Part shown: positions 1 to 59,046 of the stretch, in pieces
How the letters are laid out: each line of letters opens with the position of its first letter
Numbering within the stretch: position 1 is the stretch's first letter
NCBI GenBank assembly: GCA_002269645.1
Contig: NIVC01001587.1
Location: forward strand, 1 to 64,000
DNA: 64,000 bases
Source of the DNA: Macrostomum lignano
Taxonomy: Eukaryota
Direction of reading: 5' to 3'
Notes under the pieces: generated by a model
The model's input: only the letters and a program-made list of their open reading frames with translations
Databases searched by the model: none
Told to the model about the DNA's origin: nothing
Position numbers and translations under genes: made by a program

Positions 1-3000
1 CTAAGAAGGCGCTGAGCCCAAGCCAACTAGAGAATGTGGAATTCCCCGAGCTGCCGAAGCTGCCCAAGTTTGTGCGCGTCGTGCTGAAGACGCTGCCAGG
101 CAAGGCGACTAGCGTCAGAGCCGAGTTGAAGGCTTGCCACAAGCCGAAGACTACCGTTAGGACGACACAACAGACGACGACCACGACGGGACGCACAACA
201 CCGAGCACGACAAGCAGGAAGCCGGGATCGCCAGCCGCCGAGAAGCTCACCTTCCCGATGCCGTCGATGCCAGGAGCGACAGGAAAGACAACGACAACGC
301 CGGCGCCTACTACAACAACAAGACGCCCGGCCGTGTGCCTGCGCAAGAGCGTGAAACTGTTTGAGAGCGGCGAGCTGCCCAGCGACGCGCTGACCAAGGC
401 GGAGAAGCTCCCAGAGAAGAAGGAGTTCACACCCAAGGAGCGAAAGGAGGCCCTGCTGCCTAGCGGTAGTGGACTGCCAGTGAAGCGAGGCGGTTCCACC
501 CAGCTCACCTTCCAGGTGGACCGTCTGCCAAAGACTGCCAGCCTGATGAAGGTGGTGCTCAAGAGCAGCACGCCGGACAGTGTTCGCGAGGTGACCGTGT
601 TTGTGGCCGACGAGGACAAGCCAGAGAAGTACGTGCAAGTGAACAGGGAGACGCCGAAGGAGCCTAAGAAGGCGCTGAGCCCAAGCCAACTAGAGAATGT
701 GGAATTCCCCGAGCTGCCGAAGCTGCCCAAGTTTGTGCGCGTCGTGCTGAAGACGCTGCCAGGCAAGGCGACTAGCGTCAGAGCCGAGTTGAAGGCTTGC
801 CACAAGCCGAAGACTACCGTTAGGACGACACAACAGACGACGACCACGACGGGACGCACAACACCGAGCACGACAAGCAGGAAGCCGGGATCGCCAGCCG
901 CCGAGAAGCTCACCTTCCCGATGCCGTCGATGCCAGGAGCGACAGGAAAGACAACGACAACGCCGGCGCCTACTACAACAACAAGACGCCCGGCCGTGTG
1001 CCTGCGCAAGAGCGTGAAACTGTTTGAGAGCGGCGAGCTGCCCAGCGACGCGCTGACCAAGGCGGAGAAGCTCCCAGAGAAGAAGGAGTTCACACCCAAG
1101 GAGCGAAAGGAGGCCCTGCTGCCTAGCGGTAGTGGACTGCCAGTGAAGCGAGGCGGTTCCACCCAGCTCACCTTCCAGGTGGACCGTCTGCCAAAGACTG
1201 CCAGCCTGATGAAGGTGGTGCTCAAGAGCAGCACGCCGGACAGTGTTCGCGAGGTGACCGTGTTTGTGGCCGACGAGGACAAGCCAGAGAAGTACGTGCA
1301 AGTGAACAGGGAGACGCCGAAGGAGCCTAAGAAGGCGCTGAGCCCAAGCCAACTAGAGAATGTGGAATTCCCCGAGCTGCCGAAGCTGCCCAAGTTTGTG
1401 CGCGTCGTGCTGAAGACGCTGCCAGGCAAGGCGACTAGCGTCAGAGCCGAGTTGAAGGCTTGCCACAAGCCGAAGACTACCGTTAGGACGACACAACAGA
1501 CGACGACCACGACGGGACGCACAACACCGAGCACGACAAGCAGGAAGCCGGGATCGCCAGCCGCCGAGAAGCTCACCTTCCCGATGCCGTCGATGCCAGG
1601 AGCGACAGGAAAGACAACGACAACGCCGGCGCCTACTACAACAACAAGACGCCCGGCCGTGTGCCTGCGCAAGAGCGTGAAACTGTTTGAGAGCGGCGAG
1701 CTGCCCAGCGACGCGCTGACCAAGGCGGAGAAGCTCCCAGAGAAGAAGGAGTTCACACCCAAGGAGCGAAAGGAGGCCCTGCTGCCTAGCGGTAGTGGAC
1801 TGCCAGTGAAGCGAGGCGGTTCCACCCAGCTCACCTTCCAGGTGGACCGTCTGCCAAAGACTGCCAGCCTGATGAAGGTGGTGCTCAAGAGCAGCACGCC
1901 GGACAGTGTTCGCGAGGTGACCGTGTTTGTGGCCGACGAGGACAAGCCAGAGAAGTACGTGCAAGTGAACAGGGAGACGCCGAAGGAGCCTAAGAAGGCG
2001 CTGAGCCCAAGCCAACTAGAGAATGTGGAATTCCCCGAGCTGCCGAAGCTGCCCAAGTTTGTGCGCGTCGTGCTGAAGACGCTGCCAGGCAAGGCGACTA
2101 GCGTCAGAGCCGAGTTGAAGGCTTGCCACAAGCCGAAGACTACCGTTAGGACGACACAACAGACGACGACCACGACGGGACGCACAACACCGAGCACGAC
2201 AAGCAGGAAGCCGGGATCGCCAGCCGCCGAGAAGCTCACCTTCCCGATGCCGTCGATGCCAGGAGCGACAGGAAAGACAACGACAACGCCGGCGCCTACT
2301 ACAACAACAAGACGCCCGGCCGTGTGCCTGCGCAAGAGCGTGAAACTGTTTGAGAGCGGCGAGCTGCCCAGCGACGCGCTGACCAAGGCGGAGAAGCTCC
2401 CAGAGAAGAAGGAGTTCACACCCAAGGAGCGAAAGGAGGCCCTGCTGCCTAGCGGTAGTGGACTGCCAGTGAAGCGAGGCGGTTCCACCCAGCTCACCTT
2501 CCAGGTGGACCGTCTGCCAAAGACTGCCAGCCTGATGAAGGTGGTGCTCAAGAGCAGCACGCCGGACAGTGTTCGCGAGGTGACCGTGTTTGTGGCCGAC
2601 GAGGACAAGCCAGAGAAGTACGTGCAAGTGAACAGGGAGACGCCGAAGGAGCCTAAGAAGGCGCTGAGCCCAAGCCAACTAGAGAATGTGGAATTCCCCG
2701 AGCTGCCGAAGCTGCCCAAGTTTGTGCGCGTCGTGCTGAAGACGCTGCCAGGCAAGGCGACTAGCGTCAGAGCCGAGTTGAAGGCTTGCCACAAGCCGAA
2801 GACTACCGTTAGGACGACACAACAGACGACGACCACGACGGGACGCACAACACCGAGCACGACAAGCAGGAAGCCGGGATCGCCAGCCGCCGAGAAGCTC
2901 ACCTTCCCGATGCCGTCGATGCCAGGAGCGACAGGAAAGACAACGACAACGCCGGCGCCTACTACAACAACAAGACGCCCGGCCGTGTGCCTGCGCAAGA

Positions 3001-6000
3001 GCGTGAAACTGTTTGAGAGCGGCGAGCTGCCCAGCGACGCGCTGACCAAGGCGGAGAAGCTCCCAGAGAAGAAGGAGTTCACACCCAAGGAGCGAAAGGA
3101 GGCCCTGCTGCCTAGCGGTAGTGGACTGCCAGTGAAGCGAGGCGGTTCCACCCAGCTCACCTTCCAGGTGGACCGTCTGCCAAAGACTGCCAGCCTGATG
3201 AAGGTGGTGCTCAAGAGCAGCACGCCGGACAGTGTTCGCGAGGTGACCGTGTTTGTGGCCGACGAGGACAAGCCAGAGAAGTACGTGCAAGTGAACAGGG
3301 AGACGCCGAAGGAGCCTAAGAAGGCGCTGAGCCCAAGCCAACTAGAGAATGTGGAATTCCCCGAGCTGCCGAAGCTGCCCAAGTTTGTGCGCGTCGTGCT
3401 GAAGACGCTGCCAGGCAAGGCGACTAGCGTCAGAGCCGAGTTGAAGGCTTGCCACAAGCCGAAGACTACCGTTAGGACGACACAACAGACGACGACCACG
3501 ACGGGACGCACAACACCGAGCACGACAAGCAGGAAGCCGGGATCGCCAGCCGCCGAGAAGCTCACCTTCCCGATGCCGTCGATGCCAGGAGCGACAGGAA
3601 AGACAACGACAACGCCGGCGCCTACTACAACAACAAGACGCCCGGCCGTGTGCCTGCGCAAGAGCGTGAAACTGTTTGAGAGCGGCGAGCTGCCCAGCGA
3701 CGCGCTGACCAAGGCGGAGAAGCTCCCAGAGAAGGAGTTCACACCCAAGGAGCGAAAGGAGGCCCTGCTGCCTAGCGGTAGTGGACTGCCAGTGAAGCGA
3801 GGCGGTTCCACCCAGCTCACCTTCCAGGTGGACCGTCTGCCAAAGACTGCCAGCCTGATGAAGGTGGTGCTCAAGAGCAGCACGCCGGACAGTGTTCGCG
3901 AGGTGACCGTGTTTGTGGCCGACGAGGACAAGCCAGAGAAGTACGTGCAAGTGAACAGGGAGACGCCGAAGGAGCCTAAGAAGGCGCTGAGCCCAAGCCA
4001 ACTAGAGAATGTGGAATTCCCCGAGCTGCCGAAGCTGCCCAAGTTTGTGCGCGTCGTGCTGAAGACGCTGCCAGGCAAGGCGACTAGCGTCAGAGCCGAG
4101 TTGAAGGCTTGCCACAAGCCGAAGACTACCGTTAGGACGACACAACAGACGACGACCACGACGGGACGCACAACACCGAGCACGACAAGCAGGAAGCCGG
4201 GATCGCCAGCCGCCGAGAAGCTCACCTTCCCGATGCCGTCGATGCCAGGAGCGACAGGAAAGACAACGACAACGCCGGCGCCTACTACAACAACAAGACG
4301 CCCGGCCGTGTGCCTGCGCAAGAGCGTGAAACTGTTTGAGAGCGGCGAGCTGCCCAGCGACGCGCTGACCAAGGCGGAGAAGCTCCCAGAGAAGAAGGAG
4401 TTCACACCCAAGGAGCGAAAGGAGGCCCTGCTGCCTAGCGGTAGTGGACTGCCAGTGAAGCGAGGCGGTTCCACCCAGCTCACCTTCCAGGTGGACCGTC
4501 TGCCAAAGACTGCCAGCCTGATGAAGGTGGTGCTCAAGAGCAGCACGCCGGACAGTGTTCGCGAGGTGACCGTGTTTGTGGCCGACGAGGACAAGCCAGA
4601 GAAGTACGTGCAAGTGAACAGGGAGACGCCGAAGGAGCCTAAGAAGGCGCTGAGCCCAAGCCAACTAGAGAATGTGGAATTCCCCGAGCTGCCGAAGCTG
4701 CCCAAGTTTGTGCGCGTCGTGCTGAAGACGCTGCCAGGCAAGGCGACTAGCGTCAGAGCCGAGTTGAAGGCTTGCCACAAGCCGAAGACTACCGTTAGGA
4801 CGACACAACAGACGACGACCACGACGGGACGCACAACACCGAGCACGACAAGCAGGAAGCCGGGATCGCCAGCCGCCGAGAAGCTCACCTTCCCGATGCC
4901 GTCGATGCCAGGAGCGACAGGAAAGACAACGACAACGCCGGCGCCTACTACAACAACAAGACGCCCGGCCGTGTGCCTGCGCAAGAGCGTGAAACTGTTT
5001 GAGAGCGGCGAGCTGCCCAGCGACGCGCTGACCAAGGCGGAGAAGCTCCCAGAGAAGAAGGAGTTCACACCCAAGGAGCGAAAGGAGGCCCTGCTGCCTA
5101 GCGGTAGTGGACTGCCAGTGAAGCGAGGCGGTTCCACCCAGCTCACCTTCCAGGTGGACCGTCTGCCAAAGACTGCCAGCCTGATGAAGGTGGTGCTCAA
5201 GAGCAGCACGCCGGACAGTGTTCGCGAGGTGACCGTGTTTGTGGCCGACGAGGACAAGCCAGAGAAGTACGTGCAAGTGAACAGGGAGACGCCGAAGGAG
5301 CCTAAGAAGGCGCTAAGCCCAAGCCAACTAGAGAATGTGGAATTCCCCGAGCTGCCGAAGCTGCCCAAGTTTGTGCGCGTCGTGCTGAAGACGCTGCCAG
5401 GCAAGGCGACTAGCGTCAGAGCCGAGTTGAAGGCTTGCCACAAGCCGAAGACTACCGTTAGGACGACACAACAGACGACGACCACGACGGGACGCACAAC
5501 ACCGAGCACGACAAGCAGGAAGCCGGGATCGCCAGCCGCCGAGAAGCTCACCTTCCCGATGCCGTCGATGCCAGGAGCGACAGGAAAGACAACGACAACG
5601 CCGGCGCCTACTACAACAACAAGACGCCCGGCCGTGTGCCTGCGCAAGAGCGTGAAACTGTTTGAGAGCGGCGAGCTGCCCAGCGACGCGCTGACCAAGG
5701 CGGAGAAGCTCCCAGAGAAGAAGGAGTTCACACCCAAGGAGCGAAAGGAGGCCCTGCTGCCTAGCGGTAGTGGACTGCCAGTGAAGCGAGGCGGTTCCAC
5801 CCAGCTCACCTTCCAGGTGGACCGTCTGCCAAAGACTGCCAGCCTGATGAAGGTGGTGCTCAAGAGCAGCACGCCGGACAGTGTTCGCGAGGTGACCGTG
5901 TTTGTGGCCGACGAGGACAAGCCAGAGAAGTACGTGCAAGTGAACAGGGAGACGCCGAAGGAGCCTAAGAAGGCGCTGAGCCCAAGCCAACTAGAGAATG

Positions 6001-6043
6001 TGGAATTCCCCGAGCTGCCGAAGCTGCCCAAGTTTGTGCGCGT
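1..6043 (+). repeat. Coding tandem repeat, 663-bp unit (221 aa), ~9.1 copies in window
   Basis: Units recur every 663 bp and are near-identical. Variants I saw: a 3-bp deletion near 3731 (one Lys lost) and a synonymous G>A at 5315. The array diverges at 6044. Confidence 0.98.
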
Positions 6044-9000
6044 TATAGTTCAAATTTTGGCTGAGATGTCCACGAATGTCTCTTTGGATCTATTTTCGTG
6101 TCAGGATGATTTTTATCCATGTATGAATTGCACACACAACGGGACTTCGTACATTGAAGGCTCGATTGTATCGCTTAATGGAGTCAAATGTGATCATCAG
6201 TAAGTGTTTAACGCGACTTGTAGTTTTTGGAGTTAAAGTTTTTGTTTATTGTTTGCATATGAATTTCTTCGTTTTTAGTGTGTGCCGGAAACGATCGTGG
6301 GAGCCTCTTTATGACTGCTCGTCATGGAGTTCCTGGTCAAACTGCTCGTCGGAATGCGATGCCGGATTCAAGACTAGGATGAAGATCTGTCGGTCTAGTT
6401 TCCGGGATCTGATTGCAAGGCAAAATCTGACGTCGTTGGAAAAGTGCTTTAACCAGGTCGAGCGAGAACCGTGTTTTAACAGAAGATGCTCTAGTATGTA
6501 TTTTTTGCAATGCTCTTCTTCGTCACTTGAATTTTCGTTAATCTACTGCAATTTTGTTTTTTTTTCAGAAACTGAGTGCAACCCTGCAGAATGGGGTCCC
6601 TGGAGCCCGTGCTCTGGAGAGTGCAGCACTTTGCTTTCAGAGCGGAAGCGGCAGCCGGGCAGCGCTGTGTTGTCAGAATTTTGCAAGAAAGTTCAACTGC
6701 CAGAATCGCGCTGTGCCCGAAAACGGAAAAGTGCCGTAAGTTTAGAATCTGCTTTTTTATTAGTATTTCCTTCTTTGTATACCGAGACGCATTCCATTGT
6801 GCTTTACTATTCTTTATTTAGTCTTGCTCTTTTAAAGTAGGATTTAAATCATTTTCCTCTTTCAGTGTGCAAGGATCCCAATGCAGCGTGGAACAACTGC
6901 TCAAACCAATGTCCTTTCACATGCGGCCACCTCTCCGAGCAATCTGCGTGTGTCATGACCTCTGCCTGCGTGCCTGGGTGCGCGTGCAAGCCAGGCTATT
7001 ACCTGCAGGACGGCCGCTGCGTACCGCAGTCGCAGTGCCGCTGCCCAGGTCTCACACCAACTACATTGGCGATTAGTACAACTGCACTGACGACTCCCAG
7101 TACTGGAGCCGCTGCCGCCTTGTTTGTGTCTTACTCAAGTCCAAAGGCTCGAATTCGCGGAACCGCCGCTCCTGACAAAATCTCAATGCTGATTCCGGAT
7201 CTCAACCTATTGATCCCCGCACTGCCAACTATCGTAGGAGGTGGAGCTTCAAAGCCAGCCGATGGCGCTGACTTGAAATCAACGTCAGTTAGCGTTGGCG
7301 CTAAAACCAATCCGCCTGCGACTTCCAGTTCGCAAGCGCCACGCATCCGGGGCACGGCAGCGCCGGATCGTGCGTCAATGCTCATCCCCATGCTTCCTGG
7401 CAAACCAGCTGCTACCCCTGTGAAGCCGGCTACGACTGCGACAGCACCGACTCCTACAACACCGGTCAGGATTCGAGGCACTGCAGCGCCAGACGGAGTA
7501 AACCTGCTGATCCCTACGCTATCACTGGGCTCAGCTGCTAATACCACAACTATGGCTCCCAGTACAACTGTTCCAACGACAACTGCGGCGGCATCTGTTA
7601 GCACAGTTGCATCCGTGAATGGAATTCCCGCCGCACCTTCTAACGCTGCAACGCCAGGCGCTTTTGCTCCGGGAGTAACGAGCGGGTCGTCAGGCAGCTT
7701 CACAGTGAAGGGCTTTGTTTCTCCGGCTCAAGGACTTGGTAAAGCCAACACAATGGGTGCGTTCCGAGTAACGTCTCTGCTTAACATGAAACGGCCGCCT
7801 CCACCGCCCCCACCGAGGCCCGGAGGCAACCACGGACGGTTCCAACATTCAGCATTCCGACTGCCGCCCAAGTTCCACCTACCTGCACCATCGGGAGGCA
7901 GGCCGGCTTTCAGGCTGCCGGGCCAGTTTAAACCGCCTCCGGCGTTCCGTCCACCCGGCGGTGGCAGCTTTGGAAAGTTTAATCCTGGCAAGCCAGTTTT
8001 CCGCCTGCCTGGAGCTGGCTCTTTCAATCCGCCGGGAAAGCCAGGCACAAAGAATTCGAGTCCGTCTGTGCCTCACACTCCGGCCGCGGCTAGCCCTGCC
8101 CAACCGGTGACTCCTAAGTCATCAGCATCGACCCCGGCTCCCCCACCAGGCCTAAAGCCAGTCCCATCAGGCCAGCAGGCTTCAGTTGCGCCCACTAAAC
8201 CGACTACAAAGGCGCCAGTGCCGATGTCGAGCCAGGGAACCAGAATTCGTGGCACTGCTGCCGACGATCGCGTGGACCTACGAATTCCAACTCTGCCGAA
8301 CTTGCTGCCTCTGCCAACTTCTCCAAGGACTAAGCTGTTTACAAAGCGCTCAACGCCGTCAACTAGATCCATGCCGAGCATTGGTCCCCATACAAGCGCT
8401 ACCGCTAAGCGAAAACTTACTTCGGCCGCTCCAGTCACTAGCAAGCCTCTACGCCCATCTTTCCCGGGTATTCCGCCAGCGGGACCGCACGCGCCGCCCG
8501 GTGGACAAGGTTCCAGCCCGGCAACGCCTAAGAAGCCGACAACAGTTGTGACAACAACATCGATGGGTACTCGAGCAACTAACAGTTGGGTGATGATTGG
8601 TGGCAGCAACTGTACATGCACATCAGGCAAGACCACCTGCGTTGGAGGGCACGAGGGCTCGCTAGCTGCCTGGTCTACGTGGACAGCGTGGTCCAACTGC
8701 AGCGCCCACTGTGGCCAGGGCAAGCAGTACAGGTTCCGCCAGTGTTCTGGCCCAGCCTGCGTTGGAAACGGTCACGCCAATGAGTCCAGAGCTTGCACCG
8801 GAGTGGACTGCTACTGCGTCTTCAGCCGAGCCAAACTACAGTGGCTGCTAACTGATGATTACTATCACGCCGAGATGTGGGTCGAACGTGACGGAAAACC
8901 AGGCCTGAGCAGTCCTCTGGAAACAGTGAACGACGGCGATAGACTCGAAAGCGGCTCGGTGCTGCAGGTCGGCTGCCTTCGTTGCACCTGCAAGGACGGC

Positions 9001-12000
9001 GGATTTGCCTGCAAACTGCAGCGCTGCGCCAGCGACTGTCAATGGAGCGCCTGGCAGCCGTGGGCCACGTGCAGCGCCACCTGCGGAGGCGGCTTGCAGA
9101 CAAGACTACGGACGATTCACAAGCCAGCTGTAGCCAACGGTGCGCCTTGCCAGGCGAGCGGCTTCACGGACACGCAGGCCTGCAACCTGGATCCATGCCC
9201 TGGCTGCTCCTGGTCCAGCTGGTCACAGTGGAGCAACTGCACCGGCAGCGCTACCAGCGACATCGGAGTGCGAGAACGGCGACGCCAGCCGATCGGCAGC
9301 TGCAAAGAAGCCGACCGCGACCTGCAGCCGTGCCAACTGCGCCCGGCACAGTCCAAATGCAAGCCCGGCCAGCTGCACAGCGCCTGTCACAACGTTACAG
9401 GCTGCGAGGTGGCTTGCTCTGCCGGCGCTAACGCTAGGACCCTCTGCTCACAGACTGACGCGTGCCTAAGTGGCTGCCTGTGCCCCAAGGGTCAAGTGAT
9501 GGGCCCCAATGGACAGTGCGTTGCCACTGACAAGTGCAGATGCTTGCCAAAATCAATCAACTGTTCAAACTGGTAAGTTTCGAGGTCAGTCTTGAGTAAT
9601 ACACACTGAAAACTTCTTGCAGAATAGATGAGGGGCAACATCCCGCACGCCTAGACTAGTCAAGGAGCACTAGTAATATATATTCTGGAAGTCCTTGGCT
9701 GTAGTTTTTACAACGTTTTTAGACACTGCACTTCCTAGGAATGGAAATTTTCAGCTCAAAAGCGTTCTCGAACGACATCGGAGTGCGAGAACGACGACGC
9801 CAACTGATCGGCAGCTGCAACGAAGCCGACCTTTTCGACATGTTTTGATTAGTTCTCGGTCCAGAGTTATAAAGTCGCCCTTCTAATCAAACTTTGCCCA
9901 TCCAATCGAGTAGAAAGTATTTTGAATTATCGCAACTTGAACACCAATAAATTCCACTCCGCAGCTTCAAGCCAGTCTGCCTGAACGGCCAGCCGACCTG
10001 CCTGCCGGACATGAACTGCCAGCGTCTCTACACCGAGTGGTCGGCCTGGTCGGCTTGCTCAGCCGCCTGCGGCGAGGGTCTCAGCCACCGAACTCGCCAG
10101 CTGCTGCAGGAGGGCCGCCGGCCAGCCGGCTGCGGCAAGTCGGACCTGATCGAGACGCGCCACTGCAACGCCCGGCCGTGCGGCTACGCTTGCAAAGATC
10201 GGAATGGCGACTTGTACACCGAGGGACAGGCTATGCCGGCGCTGGACCAGTGCTCCATGTGGTGAGCTCAAGCTCTTCATGCATGTACACCCGTGCATCT
10301 CCTACATGCGTGTCTAATAGTGAGATTCGATCTGGCCTGGATCTCAGCATGCAGTTAGATACAGACGTTCGGAATCATATTTAATCAACTACAAGCCTCA
10401 CCCTTTTAATGTCGGTTGGTGACTTTTAATGTCGGTTGGTGACTTTTAATGTCGGTTGGTGACTTTTAATGTCGGTGGTGACTTCTAATGTTGTCAAGCA
10501 TTCCGCAACCTTTATTGCACGCATTATATTGGAGATTACACTATTTATTTTTTAATACTGTACGCGTATGCGTAATTCCAAACTGTTTCTCGCACAGACG
10601 GCATTATTAACATCCTCAACCAACTGCAGCTTCTGCCGCGCCAATCGCACCGAGTGTGTCAGCAAGGCGAAGGTAGGCGAGCCGGTGCCCGCCCCGGTCT
10701 GGTCGGCCTGGTCAACCTGGAGCTCCTGCGTCAGCGCGGCTGCCAACAACCGACGCCAGGAGCGGCGCCGCCGGTGCGTGCGCATCTGTCCAGACGACCC
10801 CAGGAAGTGCGGAGAGTTCTTCGACAAAGAGGAATCGGTCGAATGGAAGGCTTGCCTTCCCAAAACACCGCGTAAGCACTTTGAAATAACAGTGTTGGCA
10901 CGGGTGGGGGTCGCAACTCTCCCATTTCTACCGCAGCTCAGCGCTGCTTCAAGCGTACTAACCGATATCAACTCAGCTTAACTTGCATGTTCTGGCGACC
11001 TCTCTTCTCCCCAGTTCTGAAACGAGACTGCATTGTGTCGCCGGATTGGATCGAGGGCACCTGCTACGCCAACTGCATGGTCCGCTCCGCTGTGGCCAAA
11101 GGATTCCGCACTCTCTACCGGCGAATCCTTCAGCTGCCGGCGAACGGAGGCGCTCCGTGCCCCGAACTGCGCCGCGAAGACGTGCCGTGCACGAAGACCT
11201 GCCCAGTCGACTGCTCGCAGACCGCCTGGTCTGCCTGGGGCGCCTGCGTCCGCGCCTCCAACTCCGGCTGCTCCGGCCTGCAAGTGCGGTCGCGCGGCGT
11301 CTTAGTGCCGCCCGCCAACGGAGGCCGCGCCTGCGAGGACGCCAAGCAGCTTCGGTCCTGTCTGGCGCCCGGCTGCCAGACCAGCGCCTGTCGGGCTCCA
11401 ATGACGAAGCAGCCGCTACAGCAGAGCCGATGCATCGTCCGCTGCTCTGATCTGGCCAGCGAAGACAAGTGCGCGCCAGTCCAGGCTGCCAACGCTGCGG
11501 CCGTCAATGCAACAGCGTGTGCCTGTCCTGCTGGCCAGTACGAACAGGACGGTCGCTGCGTGGCCAAGCAGGCCTGCCGATGCCGCTGGAACGAGGAACT
11601 GATGGGCCAGCGAAGTCCCGGCACCAGGGAGGAGTTCGCAGCCGGGGAGCGGCTTGTCATGGGCTGCAAGAACTGGTGAGCGGCGGTGAACTCTTCTGCA
11701 CTTACTAAATACCCATTGAAGCACATGTACTACTGTTCAAACAACCAATGTACTGACTGCATAGTGGCCTATCCTGCAATCAGAGAATACAGATGATTGT
11801 AAGGTGGCTTAGACCACTGCCACAAATCAAGACGACATGACAGTCGACCCCTGAACACCCCACCCGGATGCGTATGCGGGCTCACACAAGGTGTACAGTA
11901 GGGGGCGTAGCCTAGCGGTCTAACGCAGCGCTCTGATGTTTCAGCGGCCCAGGCTCGATTCCAAGTCCAGTCATAATAATTTGGGGTTAAATTGGAATCT

Positions 12001-15000
12001 CGGCTTGGCTCTGCTCGTGCAATTAACGGCCAGCTTGAGGGCCAACCTCCAAGGCACAGTGAAGTGTATATGCCTAACGATAAATAAAGTCAGGGCCGCT
12101 GTACACTCCTGTGTGAGTGTGTGCCTGTGCGTATGACTGCGTACGTATCCTTGCGCTTGTGTGCCTGCTCAGGGGATGCTCAGTGCATACTACTAGCACA
12201 CAGCCACCCTTCCTCTGCCTCTAATACAGGGTGTACTGCACCCCTGACATTCTTATCGTCAGGAGTGTACACTTTTTGTAGCTTTTGTGGGTTGCCCTTT
12301 ATTGGCCAGAATAGTGCAGAAAACTCTGGGCCAATATTCGTGCACTAAAGCCCCAAGTTGAGTGTGGCTCACTCACGGAATTTAACCCATGGGGTCGTAT
12401 GGCGCGAGGGTCGGACGCGTTTACCGCTGAGCAGCCCCCCACCCATGTAAAGGTGGCTACCTGATTGCTAATTATCGTTACTCTGCCGGTATTTAACAGC
12501 ACCTGCCAGGACGGAGTGTTCAAGTGCAACCGGCTGTCGAGCTGCTCGGACGAGTGCCACTGGTCCAACTGGCGTCCCGAAGGCAAATGCACCGCCGGCT
12601 GCCGGCTCAAGCCGGGCCTGCAGAAGTTTGTGCGCTCGCCGAGAAACTCGGACTACCTGCCGACTAAGGCCTGCCAGGGACCGTCGGTGAAATACGAGCT
12701 GTGCAGCTCAACTCGAAGCTGCGGTAAGTGTGCAAAAAATATGAAACTTTTGCCTAAATGTCAATCTACAAATGAGTACTAAGTCTCTCTAAACTTTCCG
12801 ATCTCTAAGTTGTGTACCGCACAAAATGCAATAAGCATCAGCCCGGTAGCAGACCCTAAATTTCAGCTGCCGTCATCCAGATTCATAAGCCCTAATCTTT
12901 TCAATTCCTAACTGACAACGCCTTGAAAGCTCAATAAAACAGTTAAGGGTTCAGGGGGGTTCTAGCCTAGTGGTTAGAGCGTCGGACTCACGACTTGAAG
13001 GTCGGGGGTTCGATTCCCGATCCCACTAGGAACAATTTGTGTCCTTAAACAAGGCATTTAACTCTGAATTTCTTCAGTTCACTCAGCTGTAAAATGGTTG
13101 CCAGCATTAGCTGGGGTAATTGAGGGTGCGTGGCGACCCCCCCCCCCAGTCCTTGGACTGAACAGCCGTACGCAGCCTTCAGATGCGCCGCGCAATAGCT
13201 GCGGCTGAGCTGTGGGTTGCACATCTGCCGATTGGGGCAAATGTAATCAAATACGATTTTTTATGGTTATTATTAATTAGTTTATATAACGCTAAGGCGC
13301 TGGGAAGTGTTGCCTCACAGGCGTCGCCCTTCATCCTCACTTCCCCTTCCCGTCCATCCAGACTCGCTGTGCCCCAGCGGACAGCGCTACAACGAATTTG
13401 GCGAGTGCGATGAGCAGTGCTACTCAGCGGGCAGCCTCGGACAGCCGCAGCGTCAGCGCTGCCCAGAGCAGGCCTGCGTCTGCGCGCGCGGTCTGGTGAA
13501 ACGTGGCGACTCGTGCGTGCCCAAATCCGAGTGCTACAAGTGCTCCAGCGGCAATACTACTCTGCCGGTGAGTAGTTAAGTGGTACACGTGTAGGATTTT
13601 AATAATTTTGCTTTCGGAAGTTTGACCCGCTGCTTATATATACTACTAGGAATATCAGCATGTAGCCTATAGGCCAAGCGTCATTCAGAACAAACAATTC
13701 ATTCGCATTTTTCATTTAAACAGGACGGCGGCTACTCCGTGGACTTGGCAGCCTGCCAGATTGTCACCTGCGACAAGGGCAGAACAAGCGCTGTGCCGCT
13801 CAGCGTCGACCAGATGCCGGCCTGCAGTCTGGAGGACGAACGGATCGCCCAGTCAGCGCCAGTAAGCACCTGTTTAGCTGCTTTTCTGCTCGCGTGAATG
13901 TTGCAGTCTGGCTTAGGAGGCAAGTCTTAGTCTCACTCAGGGTGGTACAGTCTCACTCAGGGAGGCACGGTCTCACTCAGGGAGGTACAGTCTCACTCAG
14001 GGAGGTACAGTCTCACTCAGGGTGGTACAGTCTCACTCAGGGAGGTACAGTCTCACTCAGGGTGGTACAGTCTCACTCAGGGAGGCACAGTCTCACTCAG
14101 GGAGGCACAGTCTCACTCAGGGTGGTACAGTCTCACTCAGGGAGGCACAGTCTCACTCAGGGAGGCACAGTCTCACTCAGGGTGGTACAGTCTCACTCAG
14201 GGTGGTACAGTCTCACTCAGGGAGGCACGGTCTCACTCAGGGTGGTACAGTCTCACTCAGGGTGGTACAGTCTCACTCAGGGAGGTACAATCTCACTCAG
14301 AGAGGTACAATCTCACTCAGGGAGGCAGGTCTCACTCAGGGTGGTACAGTCTCACTCAGGGAGTACAATCTCATTCAGGGAGGTACAATCTCACTCAGGG
14401 AGGTACAATTTCACTCAGGGAGGTACAGTCTCACTCAGGGAGGTACAATCTCACTCAGAGAGGTACAATCTCACTCAGAGAGGTACAATCTCATTCAGGG
14501 AGGTACAATCTCACTCAGAGAGGTACAATCTCACTCAGAGAGGTACAATCTCACTCAGGGAGGTACAATCTCATTCAGGGAGGTACAATCTCACTCAGGG
14601 AGGTACAATTTCACTCAGGGAGGTACAGTCTCACTCAGGGAGGTACAATCTCACTCAGAGAGGTACAATCTCACTCAGGGAGGCACAGTCTCACTCAATG
14701 AGGCAGGGTTCCGAGATTTTGTCGATGGTCAAAACCATCCTCATATGTGACACTTTATCACAAAATGTTAGTAATGTGCACTCCATATGCCCAAACAGAA
14801 AGTAGCATAGTATGCATAGAATCTATTTAATGCAACACCACCGTTCGCACCGCCAGAAGGCGAAGGACCCCAACCGCTGCTGCTACCGGGCTTCGGCTTC
14901 CGCCTGCTCGCGCGAGGAGGTGTCAATCTCGAAGTTGGACGACTCCTGCCTGCTGACTTCGCCAATCCGGGTGCCGCACTGCCGCGGCCAGTGTCCGCAG

Positions 15001-15243
15001 GCGTCGCCGCTGATCGCGCCGCGACGTTCCGACGTTGTCGCCGCCGAGGTCGCAGCCGCCGACAGCAGCCAGGTGTACCTGTTGAAGCTGCCAGGCGCTC
15101 ACTGCACCGGCTGCCTGCCTGACAGGGTGCAGTACTCGCCCACTACGCTGACAGTGAAGTGCAATTCTGGCGAGAGTCGCCAGCTTCGGATGCCGATCGT
15201 GGGCGCGTGCCACTGCAAGCAGGTGCCGTGCCCATCCACCTGA
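1..15243 (+). CDS. Mlig-ap2: Giant secreted adhesive glycoprotein, 3' part (Macrostomum adhesion protein 2-like); 5' end lies outside the window
   Basis: Hand-spliced exons, all GT-AG and phase-consistent: <1-6199, 6279-6493, 6569-6735, 6841-9572, 9965-10261, 10630-10871, 11015-11675, 12500-12723, 13362-13567, 13724-13861, 14857-15243 (TGA). The 6841 acceptor is less certain because the stronger-looking AG at 6864-6865 is out of phase. Encodes ~9 tandem 221-aa repeats, many TSP1 motifs (WSxWSxCSxxC...RxR), TIL-like modules (CPFTC...CVPGCACKPG), vWC-like modules and a terminal cystine knot. The name rests on my recollection that Mlig-ap2 (Wunderer et al. 2019) has a 221-aa repeat and TSP1/TIL/CTCK domains; verify by alignment. 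Confidence 0.85.
9755..9848 (+). other. Intronic diverged copy of an ap2 TSP1 exon segment; candidate alternative terminal exon or pseudo-exon
   Basis: 9773-9831 copies 9258-9316. Acceptor TTTCAG ends at 9754, in phase with the donor at 9572/9573. Reads C-SKAFSNDIGVRERRRQLIGSCNEADLFDMF-stop. AATAAA at 9946-9951. Confidence 0.5.
10404..10490. repeat. Intronic minisatellite, 20-bp unit, ~4 copies
   Basis: TTTTAATGTCGGTTGGTGAC tandem copies. Confidence 0.9.
11901..12200 (+). mobile_element. tRNA-derived SINE-like element (family B)
   Basis: Starts GGGGGCGTAGCCTAGCGG (A box) and has GGCTCGATTCC (B box); GTGTGAGTGTGTG...TATGACTGCGT body resembles 59340-59380. The 3' end is uncertain. Confidence 0.55.
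12345..12440 (-). mobile_element. tRNA-derived SINE head (related to the 59229 copy)
   Basis: Reverse complement GGGGGGCTGCTCAGCGGTAAACGCGTCCGACCCTCGCGCCA...TTCCGTGAG resembles GCTCTTCGGTTCAAGCGTCTGACTCTCGTGCCA...TTCCGTGAG at ~59247-59303. Confidence 0.5.
12954..13250 (+). mobile_element. tRNA-derived SINE with MIR/CORE-like central domain (family A, copy 1)
   Basis: A box TAGCCTAGTGG, B box GGTTCGATTCC, central TGTGTCCTT...TTTAACTCTG...CTTCAGTTCACTCAGCTGTAAAATGG. Highly similar to 55211-55504 over ~300 bp. Confidence 0.85.
13921..14700. repeat. Intronic minisatellite, 20-bp unit
   Basis: GGTACAGTCTCACTCAGGGA variants filling the last ap2 intron. Confidence 0.95.
14857..15243 (+). CDS. Terminal exon of ap2 encoding a C-terminal cystine knot (CTCK)
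   Basis: CSREEV...C...CRGQC...CTGC...C...CHCKQVPC: CxGxC, CxxC and CxC spacing typical of vWF/mucin/norrin-type knots. Phase-0 acceptor at 14855-14856. Confidence 0.85.
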   Translation, partial: KAKDPNRCCYRASASACSREEVSISKLDDSCLLTSPIRVPHCRGQCPQASPLIAPRRSDVVAAEVAAADSSQVYLLKLPGAHCTGCLPDRVQYSPTTLTVKCNSGESRQLRMPIVGACHCKQVPCPST

Positions 15244-15885
15244 ACCACCCAGCTGAAACATCAGATTGAGGATACTAATCAGATTTATTAACTCTCTAGA
15301 GAACCTGAATCCGGTGGTTGGTTTGACAAAAACTTATCTTATAGATTATTAATCTAAAGCAGAGTCTCAATGCTGTTTTGTTAAAATTTTTCCCTACTAC
15401 TTCTAGTAATATTGTTTGGTATTAACTGCAATCCATCCAGCTAATGTGTAGAAAAAAGACGTTAAAATGAATTGGGAATAGCATTTGTTTAAACAAAAAG
15501 TGCTTAGCACAAGACACAGAATCACACAACATCAATAGACAAGCTGTGAAGGACTGCGTGATACCAAACTAAACTATAGCTGTGTTCCATCGAACGAAAC
15601 CTAATCTAAACTCTAAACTATTCAATACTGCGGATATTTAACATTTGACAGGCAAAATTTTGGTTGAAGAGATCCCCGAAAAAAATTCATCGATTTTTGT
15701 TGTGCTACTGTCGAAAGAAAGATTTTTATTTTGATTGGGCTGAAAAATAGTAATTAAAATTAAAGGTTATTACTCTGTCATCCACAAATATACTTTAAAA
15801 TATTTTATCAAGTGCGACGAGTAAACAACAATTAATATAATCTGTCTTTTAAAAAAAAATTTTTTCTCAAAAAACAAGGGACACT

Positions 15886-40240: not shown

Positions 40241-43200
40241 ATGGCTACCTCCGGTGCGAGTGGGGATGCTGGTGCCAGCGGATCCGGGTAATTTGCTGTT
40301 AGGCATTTTATTTTTATCGATTTATTTTGCCTTTTAGAAGCAGTCTGTTGCATTATTGAACCAATTTCAAATTTTAGATCTGGGCCTAGCTATCAACCAA
40401 ATAAAGGCTGCAACAGACTCAAGCTCAAGTTGATGAGGCAAGTGGTTAATACTCATATTGTATTAGACTGTTAGAGTTAGTAATTGTTCTTTAGGTACAG
40501 CTTCACGCCTTCCACCTCCCCGCCAGGTTGTCGGCATTATGCGCGTCAATGTTGAAAAAGTGATGCAACGCGATGAAAAGATTTCTGACTTGAATGAGCG
40601 AGCTGGTAAGTGGCTAATTTACACTTTCAAAACCTACCGCTGTGTTCCTACCGTTATGTCTTCTCTATGCAATTTTGTTATTACCCTATTTATGATAAAC
40701 ATTGGCGCTAACCTTCACTTACTTTCGCACTACTGGAAGAATATCTTTGGCCCTGTTAATCAATGTTGTCTTTTTCATTTTAATTAGCTGTTTCTTTATT
40801 TGTGTTGTCTTTGCTAATTATTGCGTACCTGCTGTTAACTAGGCCACCCCCTACTTATAGTAGTTTGCAGCTTAAACAGAATCAATCAATGACCAGAAAG
40901 CATCAGTGAGATTCCTCATCTCATCCTGTACCAGAAGGAATAAGTGAGATTCCTCATCTCATTCTGTACCGGAAGGAATTAGTGAGATTCCTCATCTCAT
41001 TCTGTACCGGAAGGAATTAGTGAGATTCCTCATCTCATTCTGTACCAGAAGGAATTAGTGAGATTCCTCATCTCATTCTGTACCGGAAGGAATTAGTGAG
41101 ATTCCTCATCTCATTCTGTACCAGAAGGAATTAGTGAGATTCCTCATCTCATTCTGTACCAGAAGGAATTAGTGAGATTCCTCATCTCATTCTGTACCGG
41201 AAGGAATTAGTGAGATTCCTCATCTCATTCTGTACCAGAAGGAATTAGTGAGATTCCTCATCTCATTCTGTACCAGAAGGAATTTCTGAGATTCCTCATC
41301 TCATCCTGTACCAGAATGGATGAGTCGGTGAGATTTCTCATTTCATCCTGTACCAGAATCAGTGAGATTTCTCATCCTGTCCAAGGCAAAACGAATGCCC
41401 CTTGTCATTTGCACCAAGACTATAATATGTACCAAGACTAAACCTCGCTTACCGGCTGCACCGCACGCCTCAGACGCCCTTCAGGCTGGCGCCTCCCGCT
41501 TTGAAGCCAGCGCCGGCCGTCTAAAACGAAAGTATTGGTGGCAAAACACCAAGGTACTGTGCTGCGAGTTGCCCGGCATGACTTTGAGTCGCTAATGCTG
41601 ATTTAAGAGAGTAGAGAGTTAAATGATTGGCTGGGTTTTTGCGATTTTTTTAAACTACCAATTTATAAATTTTATCCGATCAACTGATTAAATGAGAATC
41701 ATTGTTGACTTCCAACCTGCTTGATTATTCTTGGCTAACACCCTCCTAGATCTTCGAAAATCCGAATTCTTCAGCATCTTAAATTAGAATAAGCAGCCAA
41801 CATCTCATCTCCTCAGTTGCTGGGCCAGCCTCCCGGATCCTCAGTTGCTGGTCCAGCCTCCCAGGATCCTCAGTTGCTGGTCCAGTCTCCCAGATCCTCA
41901 GTTGCTGGTCAGTCTCCCAGATCGTCAGTTGCTGGACCATCCTCTCAGATCCTCAGGTGCTGGTCCATCCTCTCAGATCCTCAGTTGCTGGGCCAGCCTC
42001 CCAGAACCTCAGTTGCTGGTCTAGCCTCCCGGATCCTCAGTTGCTGGTCCAGTCTCCCAGATCCTCAGTTGCTGGGCCAGCCTCGCAGATCCTCAGTTGC
42101 TGGTCCAGTCTCCCAGATCCTCAGTTGCTGGGCCAGCCTCGCAGATCCTCAGTTGCTGGTCCAGCCTCCCAGATCCTCAGTTGCTGGTCCAGCCTCCCAG
42201 GATCCTCAGTTGCTGGTCCAGTCTCCCAGATCCTCAGTTGCTGGTCCAGTCTCCCAGATCGTCAGTTGCTGGGCCAACCTCCCGGATCCTCAGTTGCTGG
42301 TCCAGCCTCCCAGATCCTCAGTTGCTGGTCCAGCCTCCCAGATCCTCAGTTGCTGGTCCAGCCTCCCAGGATCCTCAGTTGCTGGTCCAGTCTCCCAGAT
42401 CCTCAGTTGCTGGTCCAGTCTCCCAGATCGTCAGTTGCTGGGCCAACCTCCCGGATCCTCAGTTGCTGGTCCAGCCTCCCAGATCCTCAGTTGCTGGTCC
42501 AGCCTCCCAGGATCCTCAGTTGCTGGTCCAGTCTCCCAGATCCTCAGTTGCTGGTCCAGTCTCCCAGATCGTCAGTTGCTGGACCATCCTCTCAGATCCT
42601 CAGGTGCTGGTCCATCCTCTCAGATCCTCAGTTGCTGGGCCAGCCTCCCAGAACCTCAGTTGCTGGTCTAGCCTCCCGGATCCTCAGTTGCTGGTCCAGT
42701 CTCCCAGATCCTCAGTTGCTGGGCCAGCCTCGCAGATCCTCAGTTGCTGGTCCAGTCTCCCAGATCCTCAGTTGCTGGGCCAGCCTCGCAGATCCTCAGT
42801 TGCTGGGCCGCCCTTCAGATCCCCAGATTGAGCAACCAACATCGCAGATCCTAAACAGTAGTTAATTCTGTCCTATAATCGAGAAATTGTGTATGATGCA
42901 GCCTTGCAGTACATTGCTTTGCTTCGATTGATTGCATTTTATCAACCATTTATACCTGCAATTAGCATGCTCACTGAACAAACCAATATCAATGGTTATT
43001 CAGCATAAAGTTCTACACTGATTTGCATTGCATTTTGCCACTAACAGACACTCTGCGCATTGGGACGCAACAATTTTCTAATGTTGCCACCAAAATGAAA
43101 CGAAAATACTGCTGGCAGAATGCCAAGGTTGCTCAATGCTTTTTATATACATATAACATGCTTTTGAGTTTTGCTAGTAAAAATTAAGACCAAATTGTGT

Positions 43201-48060: not shown

Positions 48061-59046
<10,986 letters not shown>

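What the first reader, a model, noticed from the sequence alone, without database searches (positions are those of the whole stretch)
9755..9951. Cryptic in-frame terminal exon that would make an AP2 lacking its cystine knot
Seen: the intron after 9572 holds a diverged copy of upstream TSP1 coding sequence (9773-9831 versus 9258-9316). It is preceded by TTTCAG in the correct phase, keeps the original reading frame, ends in TGA (9846-9848) and is followed by AATAAA (9946-9951) just before the normal acceptor. Established: CTCK domains dimerise vWF and gel-forming mucins. Inference: intronic splicing and polyadenylation could yield a chain-terminating AP2 isoform that tunes glue cross-linking or release. 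It may equally be a dead duplicate.
Basis: partly seen in the sequence, partly recalled or inferred. Interest (0 to 1): 0.7.

Follow-up and report, generated by a model that had tools for sequence, protein, structure and literature searches.

The report
Exon fragment copied into AP2 intron
A 59-base piece of coding sequence from the flatworm glue gene Mlig-ap2 has been copied into the next intron, where it happens to look like a small extra exon; nothing here shows it is ever used, so it is most likely a harmless leftover of DNA repair.

Summary
The window holds the 3' part of Macrostomum lignano adhesion protein 2 (Mlig-ap2). Window 9773-9831, inside the 392-nt intron 9573-9964, is a 55/59 (93%) direct copy of exon sequence 9258-9316, which encodes the middle of a TSP1 repeat. 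TTTCAG|C at 9755 is in the phase left by the donor at 9572. The frame is open to TGA 9846-9848, and AATAAA sits at 9946-9951.

None of these added features exceeds chance once a fresh coding fragment lies in an intron. An in-phase YAG with the native frame open appears at 51% of simulated insertion sites in this gene (32% in this intron). AATAAA occurs in 3 of 10 introns. Both features together appear at 9% of sites. The candidate acceptor is average, no donor follows it, and the AATAAA has a T-poor, GC-rich downstream context and sits 13 nt before the real acceptor.

The published cDNA and protein use the canonical junction, and a published cDNA probe has its primers in exons 4 and 6, on either side of this intron. 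No RNA data for this species were reachable.

Best reading: a recent short templated duplication, a dead duplicate. The chain-terminating isoform is not refuted but has no support. Interest is low.

The parts
3..6199 (+). Mlig-ap2 repeat region. It holds 221-aa (663-nt) units carrying the published antibody epitope VNRETPKEPKKALS and ends in donor CA|GTAAGT.
6866..9572 (+). Large Mlig-ap2 exon, the fourth in the window. It contains a P/T-rich region, TSP1 repeats and a TIL domain. The donor is CTG|GTAAGT, and the exon carries 2 bases of a split codon.
9258..9316 (+). Source of the duplicate. It codes (S)DIGVRERRRQPIGSCKEAD, in the middle of a TSP1 repeat.
9573..9964 (+). Canonical intron of 392 nt, GTAAGT...CGCAG, removed in the published cDNA (junction INCSN-C-FKPVCLNGQ).
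9748..9754 (+). Candidate cryptic acceptor TTTTCAG. Its PWM score is 4.16 bits, within the range of the real acceptors. It ranks 29th of 247 intronic decoy AGs and has a purine-rich tract upstream.
9755..9848 (+). Hypothetical terminal coding segment: C(split)-SKAFSNDIGVRERRRQLIGSCNEADLFDMF followed by TGA.
9773..9831 (+). Diverged copy of 9258-9316, 55/59 identical. In the native frame the four differences are two synonymous and two non-synonymous changes.
9832..9841 (+). Junction filler TTTT followed by CGACAT. CGACAT repeats the first six bases of the copy, so it is either a microhomology or target-site-like repeat, or a gapped extension of the homology (CGACcTG in the source).
9946..9951 (+). 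AATAAA hexamer, 13 nt upstream of the normal acceptor AG. The downstream 46 nt are exon sequence with 15% T.
9965..10261 (+). Next canonical exon (CFKPVCLNGQ...QCSM), which contains a TSP1 repeat.
14857..15243 (+). Last exon: a 128-aa domain with 12 Cys that resembles a C-terminal cystine knot, followed by stop TGA 15241-15243.

Best explanation
A short piece of Mlig-ap2 exon DNA was copied once, in direct orientation, into the intron 515 bp downstream. The copied piece is 59 nt, or about 63-72 nt if the junction is counted. The most likely cause is a template switch during repair or replication, that is, a templated insertion primed on microhomology. The copy has since drifted by about 7%. 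It is transcribed as part of the intron and removed with it by the normal 9572-to-9965 splice. The in-frame acceptor, the early stop and the AATAAA are by-products of placing a fresh open coding fragment into AT-rich intron sequence, not an evolved exon. Shown: the duplication, its uniqueness, its geometry and the canonical splice in published cDNA. Inferred: the repair mechanism and the lack of use.
For: The repeat is 55/59 identical, has E = 2e-20, has abrupt ends, and is the only exon-to-noncoding copy in 64 kb. Abrupt ends at 93% identity indicate a recent short event, not a decayed ancient exon. CGACAT, the first six bases of the copy, recurs just after the copy behind a TTTT filler (9832-9841). 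[quoted passage not shown]

Simulated insertion of the fragment at every position of the gene's 10 introns gives an in-phase YAG with the native frame open at 51% of sites (32% in this intron). AATAAA lies downstream in the same intron at 26% of sites, and both occur together at 9%. AATAAA is present in 3 of 10 introns and at about 1 per kb in flanking non-coding DNA. Shuffles of 9849-9964 contain it 8% of the time.

The candidate acceptor scores 4.16 bits, against -5.4 to 9.4 for the real acceptors, and 28 intronic decoy AGs score higher. No usable donor follows it: all scores are below 0, against 5.8-11.9 for real donors. The 46 nt after the normal acceptor, where a downstream element would lie, are 15% T.

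The published protein reads INCSNCFKPVCLNGQ across this intron, and the published cDNA probe RNA815_300 has its primers in exons 4 and 6. The four differences split two synonymous and two non-synonymous, which gives no sign of constraint.
Against: The candidate acceptor is the best-scoring AG in this intron and is no worse than several real acceptors of the gene, so occasional use cannot be excluded. The combination of acceptor and AATAAA arises at only about 9% of random sites. That figure is a post hoc calculation and is mildly, not strongly, unusual. No RNA-seq, poly(A)-site or population data for M. lignano could be reached. The mass-spectrometry supplements lack the predicted peptides, but the search database used there would not have contained them. 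The microhomology reading of the junction competes with a gapped extension of the homology (right-flank p = 0.02).
Confidence: 0.77

Rival explanations
1. Splicing noise. The acceptor at 9755 is used at a low level as an alternative 3' splice site. This gives an exon-5 variant extended by 210 nt (9755-10261) that carries the in-frame TGA. The product would be degraded or would give trace truncated protein, with no selected function.
For: The acceptor score of 4.16 bits lies within the real range and is the best of 27 AGs in this intron. A yTnAy motif lies upstream, at -48. Because there is no donor in 9755-9964, use of this acceptor would extend exon 5 and would not create a cassette exon.
Against: Pyrimidine content upstream of the acceptor is the lowest of all sites compared: 0.41 over -20..-4, against 0.59-0.88 for real acceptors. 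The canonical junction is the only one documented. No RNA data are available.
Confidence: 0.13
2. This is a regulated alternative terminal exon: splice 9572 to 9755, stop at 9846, and polyadenylation after AATAAA 9946. The product would be an AP2 lacking its last 718 residues, including the cystine-knot-like end. It would act as a chain terminator for glue polymerisation.
For: The phase, open native frame, stop and hexamer are all present. AP2 has a conserved 12-Cys C-terminal domain with CxGxC and a terminal C-x2-G-x12-C-x-C-x4-C. Published N-terminal vWD/C8/TIL domains (PMC6410801) make a mucin- or vWF-like tail-to-tail and head-to-head assembly conceivable.
Against: Every feature is expected at appreciable rates by chance. 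The AATAAA lies 13 nt before the normal acceptor, so cleavage would fall at or within exon 5, and the downstream 46 nt are GC-rich with 15% T. It also lies 374 nt behind the strongest 5' splice site of the gene (11.9 bits). From general knowledge, not tested here, U1 snRNP normally suppresses intronic poly(A) sites at such distances. The new tail would be a TSP1 fragment with Cys residues of unknown pairing and has no Pfam match. The published work mentions no isoform. The cystine-knot assignment itself is below the Pfam threshold.
Confidence: 0.04
3. Assembly artefact. The intronic copy is not in the animal's genome and was created by long-read misassembly or polishing.
For: The same window shows a 1-nt deletion relative to the published cDNA in exon 3 (about 6711). 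It also shows 663-nt repeat units that are 100% identical, both of which may reflect assembly or polishing limits.
Against: A 59-nt copy with four substitutions, embedded in unique intron sequence on both sides, is not what collapse, chimeras or indel errors produce.
Confidence: 0.03

Closest known systems
Microhomology-mediated templated insertions (MMB-TI / polymerase-theta-type templated insertions; PMC8421209)
   Same: A short stretch is copied from a nearby template on the same chromosome and inserted at a second site. It has abrupt ends, a few filler bases, and a short direct repeat (CGACAT) at the junction.
   Different: The template lies 515 bp away and the insert is about 60 nt, at the long and distant end of what is usually described. 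The empty ancestral site has not been seen, so the mechanism is inferred from the junction alone.
Alternative terminal exons made by intronic polyadenylation (skipped-terminal-exon type), for example secreted against membrane-bound receptor or immunoglobulin isoforms
   Same: An in-frame acceptor inside an intron, a short novel C-terminal peptide, a stop codon, and an AATAAA before the next constitutive exon.
   Different: There is no transcript evidence. The hexamer abuts the constitutive acceptor, there is no U/GU-rich downstream element, and there is no conservation evidence. The coding part is a recent copy of a neighbouring exon, not an evolved exon.
vWF and gel-forming mucin architecture (N-terminal vWD-C8-TIL, C-terminal cystine knot)
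   Same: AP2 is published with N-terminal vWD/C8/TIL domains. In this window it ends in a 12-Cys domain with CxGxC and the terminal C-x-C-x4-C spacing.
   Different: The Pfam Cys_knot score is below threshold. The usual adjacent CC in the middle of the domain is replaced by C-x2-C. Dimerisation has not been tested, and the published domain maps do not list a cystine knot.

Membership tests
Mlig-ap2 (Macrostomum lignano adhesion protein 2) | 221-aa repeats carrying the antibody epitope VNRETPKEPKKALS, and the published C-terminal sequence | tested here: met
   The epitope is present in every repeat unit of window 3-6199. The spliced model matches the published sequence through to ...CHCKQVPCPST.
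TSP1 repeat (source of the duplicate) | Pfam TSP_1 at or above the gathering score | tested here: met
   21.8 bits against a cut-off of 21.6 for the 57-aa segment around 9258-9316. The 31-aa peptide from the copy alone has no match.
Alternative terminal exon / intronic polyadenylation isoform | Usable 3' splice site in the phase of the upstream donor | tested here: inconclusive
   The phase is correct. The PWM score of 4.16 bits is within the real range, but the PWM rests on only 10 sites. Upstream pyrimidine content is the lowest seen, and 28 decoys score higher.
Alternative terminal exon / intronic polyadenylation isoform | Open frame ending in a stop before the poly(A) signal | tested here: met
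   31 codons followed by TGA 9846-9848. This is expected for any fresh coding fragment.
Alternative terminal exon / intronic polyadenylation isoform | Complete poly(A) site: hexamer plus U/GU-rich downstream element, and room for cleavage | tested here: not met
   The hexamer is present. It lies 13 nt before the constitutive acceptor, and the following 46 nt are 15% T and GC-rich. By chance the hexamer appears in 8% of shuffles.
Alternative terminal exon / intronic polyadenylation isoform | Junction reads, poly(A) reads or peptides from the isoform | not testable with these tools
   The protein word-index search gave no hits. The peptides are absent from the published MS tables, but the search database used there lacked them.
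Templated insertion by template switching | Insert matches a nearby template | tested here: met
   55/59 identical, same strand, 515 nt upstream, unique in the window.
Templated insertion by template switching | Microhomology at the junctions | tested here: inconclusive
   CGACAT appears at 9773-9778 and again at 9836-9841 after TTTT. The alternative reading is a gapped extension of the homology.
Templated insertion by template switching | Empty site in an allele, paralogue or sister species | not testable with these tools
   No other M. lignano genomic sequence could be retrieved.
C-terminal cystine knot (CTCK) | Pfam Cys_knot above the gathering score | tested here: not met
   17.7 bits against 24, E = 0.0044. 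There was no PDB sequence match.
C-terminal cystine knot (CTCK) | Cysteine signature (CxGxC; C-C-x13-C-x2-[GN]-x12-C-x-C-x2-4-C, pattern recalled from memory) | tested here: inconclusive
   CRGQC is present. The second half of the pattern matches exactly and is unique in the tail. The first half deviates (C-x2-C-x15), as shown. All 12 Cys are kept in a 70%-identical relative.
C-terminal cystine knot (CTCK) | Cystine-knot fold | tested here: inconclusive
   The single-sequence AlphaFold2 model had mean pLDDT 41 and was unusable for a fold search.

The most novel reading that the evidence does not exclude
The intronic copy is a newly born, regulated terminal exon. A fraction of Mlig-ap2 transcripts splice 9572 to 9755 and end near 9965. 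The resulting AP2 would lack its last 718 residues and its cystine-knot-like end, and would cap glue polymers and so tune cohesion or release. This would be an example of exon birth from a templated micro-duplication in a bioadhesive gene.
Probability: 0.04. Interest if true: 0.6.

Novelty: new member of a known kind. Interest (0 to 1): 0.15.

Why it matters
If the isoform were real, it would give a simple genetic handle on how a temporary glue controls polymer length, and it would be a caught-in-the-act case of exon birth. As the evidence stands, it is a neutral micro-duplication in an intron. Its main value is as a small, clean example of a templated insertion. It is also a caution that a fresh coding fragment in an intron will often look like an in-frame exon.

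Tried and rejected
- **Protein word-index search with the hypothetical isoform C-terminus:** no hits. This absence is weak, because the same index later missed a 70%-identical Logan relative.
- **Exact look-ups of unspliced ORFs ending at INCSNW and of the 35-aa intronic ORF:** nothing on record.
- **Published MS tables searched for DLFDMF and AFSNDIGVR:** absent, but uninformative.
- **Cassette or poison exon:** rejected, because there is no donor-like GT in 9755-9964.
- **Ancient decayed exon from a tandem module duplication:** rejected, because identity is 93% with abrupt ends and the left flank shows no similarity (p = 0.79).
- **Transposon or dispersed repeat:** rejected, because the rest of the intron matches nothing else in the window.
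- **Inverted-repeat pairing with the exon (I2 and I3):** arms of 14-15 nt, taken as chance.
- **Structure route to test the cystine knot:** failed, with pLDDT 41. PDB sequence search was empty.
- **Branch-point motif comparison:** not discriminating.
- **Comparison with the published protein for allelic differences:** too noisy, because the supplement text is machine-read.

Full report
**What the window is.**
The first 6.2 kb of the + strand is one open frame made of 663-nt (221-aa) units. These units contain the peptide VNRETPKEPKKALS. That peptide is the immunogen of antibody AP2_R3 in Wunderer et al. 2019, who describe Macrostomum lignano adhesion protein 2 (Mlig-ap2) as having 25 repeats of 221 aa followed by TIL and TSP1 domains (PMC6410801).

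I built a spliced model from GT-AG sites: exons 3-6199, 6279-6493, 6569-6735, 6866-9572, 9965-10261, 10630-10871, 11015-11675, 12500-12723, 13362-13567, 13724-13861 and 14857-15243. It reproduces the published C-terminal protein sequence to its end.

**The observation.**
- Window 9773-9831 is a direct, ungapped copy of 9258-9316, 55/59 identical, with blastn E = 2e-20. There are only these two copies in the window, and it is the only exon-to-noncoding duplicate in all 64 kb.
- The source lies in a TSP1 repeat (Pfam TSP_1 21.8 bits against a cut-off of 21.6) and encodes SDIGVRERRRQPIGSCKEAD.
- The copy lies in the 392-nt intron 9573-9964.
- The upstream exon ends CTG|GTAAGT with two bases (TG) of a split codon. 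TTTCAG ends at 9754, so base 9755 (C) gives Cys. The frame continues as SKAFSNDIGVRERRRQLIGSCNEADLFDMF to TGA 9846-9848.
- AATAAA is at 9946-9951, and the normal acceptor AG ends at 9964.

**Is the exon-like look more than chance?**
A recently copied coding fragment is open in its native frame by construction, and AT-rich intron sequence supplies a stop soon after. I inserted the 59-mer at every position of the gene's ten introns. I then asked how often a YAG lies upstream, in the phase demanded by that intron's donor, with the native frame open between them.
- This happens at 51% of sites overall and 32% in intron 4.
- AATAAA lies downstream in the same intron at 26% of sites.
- Both conditions hold at 9% of sites.

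AATAAA is present in 3 of the 10 introns and at about 1 per kb in the non-coding DNA downstream. Shuffles of 9849-9964 contain it 8% of the time.

A position weight matrix from the ten real acceptors is small, so it is only a rough guide. It gives the candidate 4.16 bits. Real sites score -5.4 to 9.4 when each is left out in turn. The candidate is the best AG within intron 4, but 28 of 247 intronic decoy AGs in the gene score higher. Its upstream pyrimidine content (0.41) is below every real site (0.59-0.88). Branch-point-like motifs do not discriminate.

No GT in 9755-9964 resembles a donor: all score below 0, against 5.8-11.9 for real donors. If the acceptor were used, the outcome would be either a terminal exon or an extended exon 5 carrying the stop, not a cassette exon.

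**The poly(A) reading.**
The hexamer sits 13 nt before the constitutive acceptor, so cleavage 10-30 nt downstream would fall at or inside exon 5. The 46 nt there are GC-rich coding sequence with 15% T, not a U/GU-rich downstream element.

The hexamer is also 374 nt behind the strongest donor of the gene (11.9 bits). From general knowledge of U1 telescripting, not tested here, intronic poly(A) sites close to a strong 5' splice site are normally suppressed.

The true 3' UTR extends at least about 590 nt past the stop. Both primers of the published probe RNA815_23142 map there, at about 15247 and about 15832.

**What is documented at the RNA and protein level.**
The published Mlig-ap2 protein reads ...KSINCSNCFKPVCLNGQ..., the canonical 9572-to-9965 junction. 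The published in situ probe RNA815_300 was amplified with primers that map to exon 4 (about 9102) and exon 6 (about 10823). Its primers therefore lie on either side of this intron.

Neither that paper nor the later comparative paper mentions isoforms. A literature search for alternative splicing in this context found nothing relevant. The predicted peptides are absent from the published mass-spectrometry tables, but the database used there would not have contained them.

**Attempts to reach independent sequence.**
- A word-index search with the hypothetical isoform C-terminus returned nothing.
- Exact look-ups of unspliced ORFs returned nothing.
- The spliced alternative product could not be looked up.
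- An exhaustive HMMER search with the last exon found one relative, a 1319-nt transcript contig from run SRR28338167, 70% identical over the last exon.
- A second word-index search with the whole canonical tail missed that relative and returned only generic TSP1 proteins and one M. lignano paralogue at 37% identity.

The negative result is therefore weak. No M. lignano RNA or second genomic copy was reachable, so use of the exon cannot be tested here.

**How the copy most likely arose.**
Identity of 93% with abrupt ends points to a recent, short event, not a decayed ancient exon. The left flank has no similarity (p = 0.79), and the right flank only a marginal, gapped one (p = 0.02).

The sequence reads ...TTCTCGAA[CGACATCGG...GCCGACC]TTTT CGACAT GTTTTG.... 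The first six bases of the insert recur just after it, behind four filler bases. Short inserts copied from a nearby template and flanked by microhomology are the signature of template-switch repair (templated insertions; PMC8421209). This mechanism is an inference from one junction, and an empty site has not been seen.

The four differences comprise two synonymous changes (CGG>CGA, CAG>CAA) and two non-synonymous changes (CCG>CTG, AAA>AAC). That is too few to test selection, and they show no sign of it.

**The cystine knot.**
The last exon encodes 128 aa with 12 Cys. It contains CRGQC and ends C-x2-G-x12-C-x-C-x4-C. This matches the second half of the CTCK signature as I recall it, while the first half deviates.

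Pfam Cys_knot scores 17.7 bits, below the cut-off of 24. PDB sequence search is empty, and a single-sequence structure model was unusable (pLDDT 41). All 12 Cys are conserved in the 70%-identical relative. 'Cystine-knot-like' is reasonable, but membership is not established.

**Verdict.**
The duplication is real. The exon-like features are what such a duplication would often show by chance. The poly(A) context is poor, and the only documented splice is the canonical one.

| Reading | Probability |
|---|---|
| Dead, recent templated duplicate | 0.77 |
| Low-level noisy use of the acceptor | about 0.13 |
| Regulated chain-terminating isoform | about 0.04 |
| Assembly artefact | about 0.03 |

Junction and poly(A) reads from existing M. 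lignano datasets would settle it quickly.

Noticed in passing
window 6703-6717 (exon 6569-6735): Relative to the published Mlig-ap2 protein (…QLPESR-L-CPKTEKCLCKDP…), the window lacks one base in GAATCGCGC^TGTGCC. Read literally, this exon shifts frame and the next exon hits a stop. This is either a long-read assembly indel or a broken gene copy. All other exons are open.
   Followed up: partly
window 14857-15243: AP2 ends in a conserved 12-Cys, cystine-knot-like domain that the published domain maps do not list. Together with the published N-terminal vWD/C8/TIL domains, this gives a mucin- or vWF-like layout. Pfam support is below threshold. All 12 Cys are kept in a 70%-identical transcript from run SRR28338167 (L001).
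   Followed up: partly
window 3-5966: The 663-nt repeat units that could be compared are 100% identical at the DNA level. One further unit is 660 nt and loses one Lys codon (the unit starting at 3318). Such perfect identity suggests very recent homogenisation or consensus collapse in assembly.
   Followed up: partly
window 53096-53524 and 54540-54749, minus strand: ORF fragments of an intermediate-filament gene. Pfam Filament scores 39.1 bits (E = 9e-10), just under the cut-off of 40, and matches the C-terminal end of the rod (…EIAAYKKLLDAEG). A second fragment looks coil-like. This appears to be a neighbouring gene about 38 kb downstream of AP2 on the opposite strand.
   Followed up: partly
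window 13929-14697, and 15.9-64 kb generally: Dense tandem repeats. A 20-nt unit occurs 38 times inside the last AP2 intron. A 28-nt unit occurs about 155 times at 41810-46178. (AACT) occurs about 244 times at 57766-58743. About twenty other arrays are present.
   Followed up: no
window 15244-15832: Primers of the published probe RNA815_23142 map just after the stop and about 590 nt downstream, so the 3' UTR is long. There is no AATAAA until 16116, and the first ATTAAA is at 15753. Several published primers match the window only with 2-3 mismatches, and a few isolated residue differences exist. The window may be a different allele or paralogue from the published cDNA, or the supplement text may be misread.
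   Followed up: partly
window 10403-10495: A 20-nt unit (CTTTTAATGTCGGTTGGTGA) is repeated about four times in tandem in the next intron.
   Followed up: no
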